A stretch of 64,000 bases of DNA, from contig NC_088797.1 in the NCBI RefSeq assembly GCF_011386835.1, forward strand, positions 15,810,001 through 15,874,000, given 5' to 3'. The notes beneath the pieces are model-generated. The model searched no databases, was not told the DNA's origin, and saw only the letters and a list, made by a program, of their open reading frames with translations. Both the position numbers and the translations under genes were made by a program. Source of the stretch: Chrysemys picta bellii. Its lineage: Eukaryota. This document shows, in pieces, positions 46,103-47,592 of this stretch; positions within the stretch are counted from its first letter, which is position 1; each line of letters opens with the position of its first letter.

Positions 46103-47592
46103 CATAGGTACCTTAACCCTAATGCTGGGTGCCTTATCCATAGGTACCCTTACCCTATGGGGGGGAGCCCTACCCATGGGATCCCTAACCCTAACCTCAA
46201 GCACCATACCTATAGGGACCCTAACCCTTCAGTGGAAAGTCCTACCCATAGGTACCTTAACTTTAGGGCTTGGACCCCTAGCCATAGTATGTCTAACCCT
46301 AGGGCTGGACCACCTACCCAAGAGAACCCTAACCTTAGTCCCAAATGCCCTAAGTATAGGAACCTTCGGATGCCAAATACCACCAATAGGTACCCTAACC
46401 CTAGGGTGGGGAGCTCTACCTATAAGAATCCTAACCCTTGTCCAAGTCCACTACCTATAGGAACGCTAACTCTAGAGCAGAGAGCCCTACGTATAGGACC
46501 CATAACTTTAGCCCCAAGTTCCCTACCCATAGTACCCTAACCATAGTGCAGGGAGCCCTACCCAGAGGAACCCTGACCCTAGGGTGGGAAGCCCTACCGA
46601 GAGGAACCCTAACATTAGGGCAAGGAGACCTACCCATAGGAACCCTAACCCTAGCCCCAAGTTCCCTACAGATAGGTACCCTAACCCTATGGTGGGTGAG
46701 CCATACCTATGGCAACCCTAACCCTAACCACAAGCCCCATATCCATAGGTATCCTAGCTATAGGACTGGGAGCCCTAGCCATTGGAACCCTAACCCTAGG
46801 GCGGGGAGCCCTGCCCAAAAGAACCCTAACCTTAGCCCCAAGTTGCCTTACTATAGGAACCCTAATCCTAGGATGGTGAATCCCACCCATCGGTACCCTA
46901 ACCGTAGGGTGGGGAACTCTACCCATAAGTATCCTAACCCTAGCCCGAAGTCTGCTACCCATAGTAACTCTTACCTAGGGCAGAGAACCCTACGTATAGG
47001 AACCCTAACTCTAGACCCAAGTCCCCTACCCATAGGTACCATAATCCTGTGGCGGGAATCCCTATCTGTAAGTACCCTAGTGTTAGGGTAGCTATGGGTA
47101 GGACTCCCTGCCCTAATGTTAGGTTTCCTGTGGGTAAGGGATTTCTGGCTAGGGTTAGGGTTCCTGTGAGTAGGGTACCCCACCTTAAGGTTAGGGTTCC
47201 TATGGGTAGCGCTCCCCCCCTAGGGTTAGGGTTCTTATAGATAGGGCTCCCCGCCCTAGGTTAGGGGACTTGGGCTAGATTTAGGGTTCCTATAGGTAGG
47301 GCTCCCCACCCTCGTGTCAGGTTCCTATGGGTAGGGGGCTGGGGGCTAGGGTTAGGGTTCCTATGGGTAGGGCTCCCCACCCTCGTGTCAGGGTTCCTAT
47401 GGGTAGGGGGCTTGGGGCTAGGGTTAGGGTTCCTATGGGTAGGGCTCCCCACCCTCGTGTCAGGGTTCCTATCGGTAGGGGGCTTGGGGCTAAGGTTAGG
47501 GTTCCTATAGGTAGGACTTCCCACCCTCGTGTCAGGGTTCCTATGGGTAGGGGGCTTGGGGCTAGGGTTAGGGTTCCTATGGATAGGGCTCC
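46103..47592. repeat. Telomere-like satellite: 36-bp monomers containing CCCTAACCCTA, with a strand switch at ~47080
   Basis: Monomers ccataggaaccctaaccctagggtggggagccctac and ccataggaaccctaaccctagccccaagccccctac. C-rich on the plus strand to ~47080 and G-rich afterwards; near-perfect 72-bp dimers at ~47270-47592. Confidence 0.92.

What the first reader, a model, noticed from the sequence alone, without database searches (positions are those of the whole stretch)
46103..47592. Interstitial telomere-like satellite built from two 36-bp monomers
Seen: about 40 monomers sharing a head (ccataggaaccctaacccta, nearly two CCCTAA units) with two alternative tails (gggtggggagccctac or gccccaagccccctac), embedded in ordinary AT-rich DNA. 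It is not a pure (TTAGGG)n array. I do not recognise the family. Inference: a subtelomere-derived or transposon-borne satellite that may bind telomeric proteins.
Basis: partly seen in the sequence, partly recalled or inferred. Interest (0 to 1): 0.7.

Follow-up and report, generated by a model that had tools for sequence, protein, structure and literature searches.

The report
Old telomere-like minisatellite, two opposed arms
This is a real 1.5-kb array of 36-base repeats, each built from about four decayed telomere units plus a short spacer. It is one locus of an old repeat family scattered through turtle genomes, probably ordinary neutral repeat DNA and not a relic of a chromosome end.

Summary
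There are 41 monomers of about 36 bp at 46102-47592, with a shared 20-nt head (27 hits at 3 mismatches or fewer, against 0.01 expected) and two alternating tails.

This note leaves out that the array has two arms in opposite orientation. The left arm (46102-47081, 27 monomers) is C-rich on + and the right arm (47082-47592, 14 monomers) is G-rich on +. They meet at a small palindrome at 47073-47090.

Each monomer is a 27-nt core of about four degenerate TTAGGG units plus a 9-nt spacer. The core is also a canonical G-quadruplex motif and carries a TRF-type half-site. The spacer alternates between two forms, giving a 72-bp dimer.

Contigs of three other species cover the left flank, the left arm and the strand switch at 1.3-3.6% difference, the same as the flanks. 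The locus is therefore old and shows no special constraint.

The same dimer occurs in six other contigs with unrelated flanks, so this is a dispersed family with no visible transposon body. It is not a chromosome-fusion relic, is not derived from the CR1 3' region, and shows no sign of coding.

The scan noted other telomere-like arrays elsewhere in this genome. I found no published description, but Repbase and Dfam could not be checked.

Verdict: a new member of a known kind, of modest interest.

The parts
46102..47081 (-). Left arm: 27 diverged 36-bp monomers, C-rich on + (G-rich telomere-like strand is -). G-tail and C-tail monomers occur in GC and GGC order.
   Evidence: TRF periods 36, 72 and 108 at 62-68% matches. 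Head matches are on +. Single-copy contigs of 4 species cover it (table 8).
47082..47592 (+). Right arm: 14 monomers of the same family, G-rich on +.
   Evidence: Head matches are on - from 47078. TRF rows cover 47075-47592.
47255..47592 (+). Younger block of the 72-bp dimer (C-tail monomer + G-tail monomer with head variant CCCTGACACGA), 4.7 copies.
   Evidence: TRF: period 72, 92% matches, score 571. Summed contig depth is 50-100 times baseline, and other contigs carry pieces that are 93% or more alike (tables 2 and 8).
47073..47090 (.). Strand-switch point: mini-palindrome TACCCTA-GTGT-TAGGGTA, a decayed copy of the CCCTAGGG palindrome found in G-tail monomers.
   Evidence: Sequence. It forms the tip of the predicted hairpin of 46930-47220 (-63.3 kcal/mol, z = -6.3). 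Contigs of 4 species cross it (table 8).
47593..47608 (+). 16-bp spacer holding TTCTATGATT, the 3'-tail motif of CR1 LINEs. Possibly the last bases of a severely truncated CR1 copy.
   Evidence: Compared by eye with the CR1 tails at 24940-24960 and 44000-44020. This is a weak inference.
47609..47692 (-). Fragment of a CR1 LINE 3' region, cut at both ends. It is a flank, not part of the array.
   Evidence: 83.5% identical to 24672-24756, which lies in a CR1 with an RVT_1 domain. Depth is about 1e5, and loose ends continue the CR1 sequence.
47715..47891 (.). Very high-copy 177-bp GC-rich interspersed element (SINE- or MITE-like). It is a flank, not part of the array.
   Evidence: Depth is about 1.4-3e5. 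It has sharp boundaries, with random-sequence loose ends at 47714/47715 and 47891 in all 4 runs (tables 2 and 7).

Best explanation
This is one locus of an old, dispersed minisatellite family of turtle genomes. The family's unit is a 72-bp dimer of two 36-bp monomers. Each monomer has a 27-nt core, CTAGGGTTAGGGT(TCC)TATGGGTAGGG, which is about four degenerate TTAGGG units, followed by a 9-nt spacer. The spacer alternates between CTCCCCACC and TACTTGGAG, the latter reading GGCTTGGGG in this locus. I infer that the array grew by ordinary tandem-repeat turnover (unequal exchange or replication slippage). One younger burst gave the 4.7 dimers at the outer right end, and the rest has decayed by point mutation at the neutral rate. 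The two arms lie in opposite orientation because of an old local rearrangement, either inversion of a terminal part of the array or juxtaposition of two arrays. The junction sits at the short CCCTAGGG-type palindrome that the monomer itself supplies. As side properties of the sequence, the G-rich strand (- in the left arm, + in the right) carries G-quadruplex motifs and TRF1/TRF2-type half-sites, and the two arms can pair into a long imperfect hairpin. These features could make it a weak internal binding site for telomere proteins and a difficult template for replication. I see no evidence that it is maintained for a function.
For: Shown. The core aligns to (TTAGGG)n with score 14, against shuffled-monomer means of 2.0 and 4.4. 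One search finds 8 canonical G4 motifs, all on the G-rich strand of each arm, and 14 YTAGGGTTR sites against 4 in the rest of the window. Orthology and age come, table 8: contigs of the window's own species and of three other species cover 45400-46650 and 46630-47310/47370, crossing the switch. They differ by 1.3-3.5% in the left flank and left arm, 1.5-3.6% across the switch, and 1.9-2.2% in the right flank, so the array evolves like its flanks. For the dispersed family, summed contig depth over the best-preserved monomers and the young block is 20-100 times baseline, and 2.6-6 kb contigs from elsewhere carry pieces that are 93% or more alike. Six Logan contigs, L001-L006, were reached through ORF translations. 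They hold the same core and the same two alternating spacers in arrays from about 100 bp to over 1 kb, and their flanks are unrelated. The outer right block is 92% self-identical, against 62-68% elsewhere. Inferred: the growth mechanism, the nature of the rearrangement, and neutrality.
Against: How a structured 72-bp dimer reached many unrelated loci is unexplained. Plain in-situ slippage cannot account for this, so some spreading mechanism remains hidden. Only six other loci were read, most on contigs of about 1 kb, so a short transposon terminus could have been missed. Contig depth is not a copy number. No RNA, chromatin or binding data were available, so a function cannot be excluded. The species behind the other contigs are not known to me.
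Confidence: 0.7

Rival explanations
1. The arrays are internal or subterminal tandem repeats of a mobile element (for example a non-autonomous DNA transposon or Helitron-type carrier). The two opposed arms here would be the two subterminal regions of a deletion derivative.
For: The family is dispersed with a conserved dimer structure, which calls for some spreading mechanism. The opposed arms resemble long inverted ends. TA dinucleotides abut both outer ends.
Against: Flanks of L001, L002, L004 and this locus share nothing. L001 and L006 hold complete arrays in a single orientation with unique DNA on both sides. Array ends fall at different monomer phases, and the two outer ends here are not inverted copies of each other beyond the monomer itself. 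The site is occupied in all four species laid.
Confidence: 0.12
2. The locus is a relic of two chromosome ends joined head to head, or of a captured stretch of true telomere that later decayed on the spot.
For: The core is telomere-derived in appearance, and there are two arms in opposite orientation.
Against: On the + strand the C-rich arm comes first and the G-rich arm second, which is the reverse of an end-to-end fusion. There is no run longer than two perfect hexamers. The 9-nt spacers and the A/B dimer are shared with unrelated loci, so the unit was formed before it arrived here. TTAGGG FISH in emydid turtles shows terminal signals only (PMC7348932, Figure 4 legend).
Confidence: 0.03
3. 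The family is kept because it works: as internal binding sites for TRF1/TRF2, or as G-quadruplex elements that affect chromatin, replication timing or nearby genes.
For: Each intact core is a full G4 motif and carries a YTAGGGTTR site. The core is better preserved than the spacer across loci. The locus has persisted through the split of four species.
Against: Between-species difference in the array equals that of the flanks. Only 8 of 41 monomers still hold an intact G4 motif and 14 hold a TRF-type site, which is decay and not maintenance. The spacer's lower score is largely because it has two alternative forms.
Confidence: 0.1
4. The repeats encode a repetitive protein with a 12- or 24-residue period.
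For: ORFs of 217 and 138 aa run through the arms on the C-rich sense.
Against: Two of the three frames of the consensus monomer have no stop, so long ORFs are expected by chance. The ORFs change monomer frame at 35- and 37-bp monomers. There is no Pfam match. Related ORF products carry no domain and come only from short genomic contigs.
Confidence: 0.01

Closest known systems
Interstitial telomeric sequences (ITS), in particular degenerate clustered ITS with linker sequences
   Same: It consists of telomere-like units at an internal site, degenerate, interspersed with non-telomeric linkers, and in both orientations. The review PMC9498494 lists exactly these arrangements: head-to-tail or head-to-head, degenerated, with or without linker, and part of longer repeats.
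   Different: The repeating unit is a fixed 36/72-bp composite and not the hexamer. There is no run longer than two perfect hexamers. The same composite unit recurs at unrelated loci. It is too short and too decayed to be seen by the TTAGGG FISH used in turtles (PMC7348932).
G-rich, G-quadruplex-forming minisatellites such as human CEB1 and CEB25 (from my own knowledge, not tested here)
   Same: The unit length is a few tens of bases, the G-rich strand has a full G4 motif per unit, and turnover is in blocks.
   Different: Those are single-locus, hypervariable arrays. This is a multi-locus family, and most of this array is old and stable across species.
Head-to-head telomere fusion relic, such as human 2q13 (from my own knowledge)
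   Same: Two telomere-like arms lie in opposite orientation.
   Different: The polarity is the reverse (C-rich arm then G-rich arm on one strand), the units are composite, and the same family lies at many loci.
Satellite arrays carried by transposons (MITE- or Helitron-borne tandem repeats)
   Same: It is a dispersed set of short arrays of one tandem-repeat family.
   Different: No shared non-repeat flank, terminus or target-site duplication was seen in the loci read here.

Membership tests
Interstitial telomeric sequence (degenerate, clustered type) | Tandem units derived from the species' telomere repeat (TTAGGG) | tested here: met
   The 27-nt core aligns to (TTAGGG)n with score 14, against shuffled means of 2.0 and 4.4. 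There are 28 TTAGGG on the G-rich strand of the two arms (31 on both strands) in 1.49 kb, against 28 on both strands in the other 62.5 kb.
Interstitial telomeric sequence (degenerate, clustered type) | Internal, non-terminal position | tested here: met
   Ordinary unique DNA and interspersed repeats lie on both sides within the window. The distance to the chromosome end is unknown.
Fusion-type ITS | Head-to-head polarity: G-rich strand running 5'->3' towards the junction from both sides | tested here: not met
   On + the C-rich arm precedes the G-rich arm, which is the opposite polarity.
Fusion-type ITS | Flanks belong to different ancestral chromosomes | not testable with these tools
Transposon-borne satellite | Copies share non-repeat element sequence or termini next to the array | tested here: not met
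   An all-against-all BLAST of the flanks of the window, L001, L002 and L004 found no shared sequence. Only a few loci were read.
Transposon-borne satellite | Target-site duplication at the ends | tested here: inconclusive
   Only a TA on each side was found, which is uninformative in AT-rich flanks. There was no empty site among the four species laid.
G-quadruplex-forming minisatellite | A G3+N1-7 x4 motif in the unit | tested here: met
   The consensus core GGGTTAGGGTTCCTATGGGTAGGG fits the motif. There are 4 intact motifs per arm, all on the G-rich strand.
G-quadruplex-forming minisatellite | Actual quadruplex folding and G4-dependent instability | not testable with these tools
   This needs biophysics or genetics.
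TRF1/TRF2-bound internal site | YTAGGGTTR half-sites present | tested here: met
   There are 9 in the left arm and 5 in the right arm.
TRF1/TRF2-bound internal site | Occupancy by the proteins in cells | not testable with these tools
   No ChIP data are available.

The most novel reading that the evidence does not exclude
A turtle-wide family of composite telomere-derived 72-bp repeats has spread to many unrelated sites without a transposon. One route would be capture of extrachromosomal circles of a subtelomeric satellite at double-strand breaks. Its copies would serve as internal landing sites for telomere-binding proteins and as G-quadruplex blocks.
Probability: 0.1. Interest if true: 0.55.

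Novelty: new member of a known kind. Interest (0 to 1): 0.3.

Why it matters
On its own the locus matters little. It adds a documented example of composite, degenerate telomere-like repeats at internal sites in a group where chromosome-level FISH finds interstitial telomeric repeats rare. This shows that sequence-level telomere-like arrays exist below the FISH detection level. The open point of some interest is how a structured 72-bp dimer reached many unrelated loci without a visible carrier. A genome-wide map would settle whether this is a transposon, a dispersed subtelomeric satellite, or break-repair capture.

Tried and rejected
1. Rfam scan of the whole window found no family at gathering score.

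2. Origin from the CR1 LINE 3' region. I tested this because a CR1 tail motif and a CR1 fragment abut the array. Local alignment of the dimer against 566 bp of CR1 3' sequence scored 17, against a shuffle mean of 16.8. Rejected.

3. Recent fold-back (mirror) duplication. The mirror register gives 71-77% identity, and other registers give 77-80%. The monomer-by-monomer matrix shows type matching only. The strong hairpin prediction is therefore a generic result of opposed arrays. Rejected as evidence of a mirror copy.

4. Retroposon 3'-tail model. Array ends in four loci fall at different monomer phases. Rejected.

5. Coding. There are no Pfam hits.

6. An exact scan of the 24-nt core in JGI metagenome contigs found nothing. 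This is uninformative for a turtle repeat.

7. A second ORF-frame protein word search gave only one more locus.

8. A search of the scan's findings by sequence came back blank.

9. Literature searches for a turtle satellitome, a telomere-like minisatellite or the core string found no description of this unit.

10. My first two monomer-splitting scripts slipped phase (and parts). The counts used in this report come from the corrected splits.

Full report
**What is there.** The sequence at 46102-47592 is a tandem array.
- Tandem Repeats Finder gives a 36-bp period over 46103-47048 (26.5 copies, 62% matches), with 72- and 108-bp periods superimposed.
- It gives 36- and 72-bp periods over 47075-47592. 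The best row is 47255-47592, period 72, 4.7 copies, 92% matches.
All hits lie inside the array, and 0.01 are expected by chance.
- GC is 0.52, against about 0.40 in most of the window.
- The longest perfect telomeric run is two hexamers.

**Two arms.** Head matches are on + up to 47013 and on - from 47078.
- The left arm is C-rich on + and the right arm is G-rich on +.
- The change happens at TACCCTA-GTGT-TAGGGTA (47073-47090). This is a decayed copy of the CCCTAGGG palindrome that G-tail monomers contain.
- A separate first-stage note (s1-320987) made the same point and stated that the polarity is opposite to that of an end-to-end telomere fusion. I checked this and agree: a fusion would read G-rich then C-rich on one strand, and here it is the reverse.
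- The central 291 nt fold into a long imperfect hairpin (-63.3 kcal/mol, z = -6.3).
- The mirror register is no better than others: 71-77% against 77-80% identity. The monomer matrix shows only tail-type matching.
- So there is no sign of a recent fold-back copy. The arms are two stretches of the same family in opposite orientation.

**Anatomy of the unit.** Read on the G-rich strand, the monomer is CTAGGGTTAGGGT(TCC)TATGGGTAGGG plus nine bases.
- The 27-nt core aligns to (TTAGGG)n as four units with one 3-nt insertion and two mismatches. The score is 14, against 2.0 and 4.4 for shuffled monomers.
- The nine-base spacer has two forms that alternate: CTCCCCACC, and TACTTGGAG (GGCTTGGGG in this locus).
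- In the left arm the order is a mix of G-C dimers and G-G-C trimers, which explains the 72- and 108-bp periods. The outer right arm is a strict dimer.
- The core GGGTTAGGGTTCCTATGGGTAGGG is a canonical G-quadruplex motif. Four intact motifs remain in each arm, always on the G-rich strand.
- The array holds 14 YTAGGGTTR sites, against 4 in the other 62.5 kb.

**Age and orthology.** The single run search found the stretch in runs labelled as six organisms. I laid contigs of the window's own species and of three others.
- In all four, one contig covers 45400 to about 46650 and another covers about 46630 to 47310-47370, crossing the strand switch.
- In the three other species, differences are 1.3-3.5% for the left flank plus left arm, 1.5-3.6% for the piece across the switch, and 1.9-2.2% for the right flank.
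- The array and its switch therefore predate the split of these species and change at the rate of the flanks.
- Monomers within the array differ by 30-38%, so the array itself is much older than that split (inference).
In keeping with that, the window holds CR1 LINEs with an RVT_1 domain and the typical 3' tail.

**A dispersed family.**
- Summed contig depth rises from a baseline of 22-48 to 400-7,600 over the best-preserved left-arm monomers and to 1,400-4,900 over the young block (table 2).
- Contigs of 2.6-6 kb from elsewhere carry pieces that are 93% or more alike (table 8). Depth of contigs is not a copy number, so I read this only as 'tens of other places'.
- To see other loci, I translated array ORFs and used the protein word search. 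It returned seven ORF products, all from Logan contigs. I fetched six contigs.
- All six hold the same core and the same two alternating spacers. Arrays range from three monomers (L006) and five (L001) to over 1 kb running off the contig (L003-L005).
- Their flanks share nothing with one another or with this locus. Array ends fall at different monomer phases.
- L001 and L006 are complete, single-orientation arrays in unique DNA.
- The dimer was therefore formed once and then reached many sites, but no carrier sequence is visible. How it spread is the one thing I could not explain.
- The scan's notes list two more telomere-like arrays in this genome (s1-335676, s1-321067). I could not read their sequence, so whether they belong to this family is open.

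**Flanks.**
- The left flank is unique DNA.
- On the right come 16 bp holding the CR1 tail motif TTCTATGATT.
- Next is an 84-bp CR1 fragment in minus orientation at 47609-47692. It is 83.5% identical to 24672-24756 and has loose ends that continue the CR1 sequence.
- Then comes a sharply bounded 177-bp element of extreme copy number at 47715-47891.
- The dimer has no significant similarity to the CR1 3' region, so the neighbourhood is coincidental or reflects later insertions.

**What it most likely is and does.** Shown: a degenerate telomere-like minisatellite that is a member of a dispersed family, is old, and changes at the flank rate. Inferred:
- It grew by unequal exchange or slippage, with one later burst at the outer right end.
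- The strand switch is an old inversion or juxtaposition at the monomer's own palindrome.
- The DNA is neutral.

The G4 motifs, the TRF-type sites and the hairpin potential are properties of the sequence. Whether cells use or suffer from them is untested.

The rivals are a transposon carrier, a fusion relic, a functional binding array and a coding repeat. Each is weighed in its own section of this report. None is favoured by what I could test.

**Comparison with what is known.** Degenerate telomere-like repeats at internal sites are an established category, including those with linkers, in both orientations, and as parts of longer repeats (review PMC9498494). FISH with TTAGGG probes finds interstitial signals rare in turtles and absent in the two emydids studied (PMC7348932). 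A 1.5-kb decayed array would not be seen that way. No paper in the library holds the core string, and I found no turtle satellite catalogue. Repbase and Dfam were not available, so the family may already have a library name.

**Verdict.** The feature is real and the description is accurate. It is a new member of a known kind, and interest is about 0.3.

Noticed in passing
window 47715-47891: A sharply bounded 177-bp GC-rich element. Summed contig depth is about 1.4-3e5 in all four species laid, and random sequence lies on both sides of its boundaries. It is a very high-copy SINE- or MITE-like repeat.
   Followed up: partly
window 47593-47692: An 84-bp CR1 LINE fragment in minus orientation, cut at both ends. 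It sits 16 bp from the array, and those 16 bp hold the CR1 3'-tail motif TTCTATGATT in plus orientation. This suggests two CR1 remnants at the array's edge.
   Followed up: partly
window 23772-24960: A CR1 LINE copy with an RVT_1 domain (E = 1.1e-21) and a complete 3' tail ending in (ATCTATGA)n.
   Followed up: partly
window 43000-44900: Two inverted copies of a repeat face each other (for example 43540-43600 against 44420-44560). A CR1 3' end lies between them at about 43940-44020, and a 53-bp duplication lies at 44307-44416.
   Followed up: no
window 50270-50618: A G-rich tandem array with periods of about 29-66 bp (units such as GGGGTGCAGGGCAGAAGGCTG). It is unrelated to the telomere-like family.
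   Followed up: no
L002 130-160 and window 44905-44925: The string GGGTATGTCTACACT occurs in a flank of another locus of the family and, reverse-complemented, in the window. It probably marks a common interspersed repeat of these genomes.
   Followed up: no
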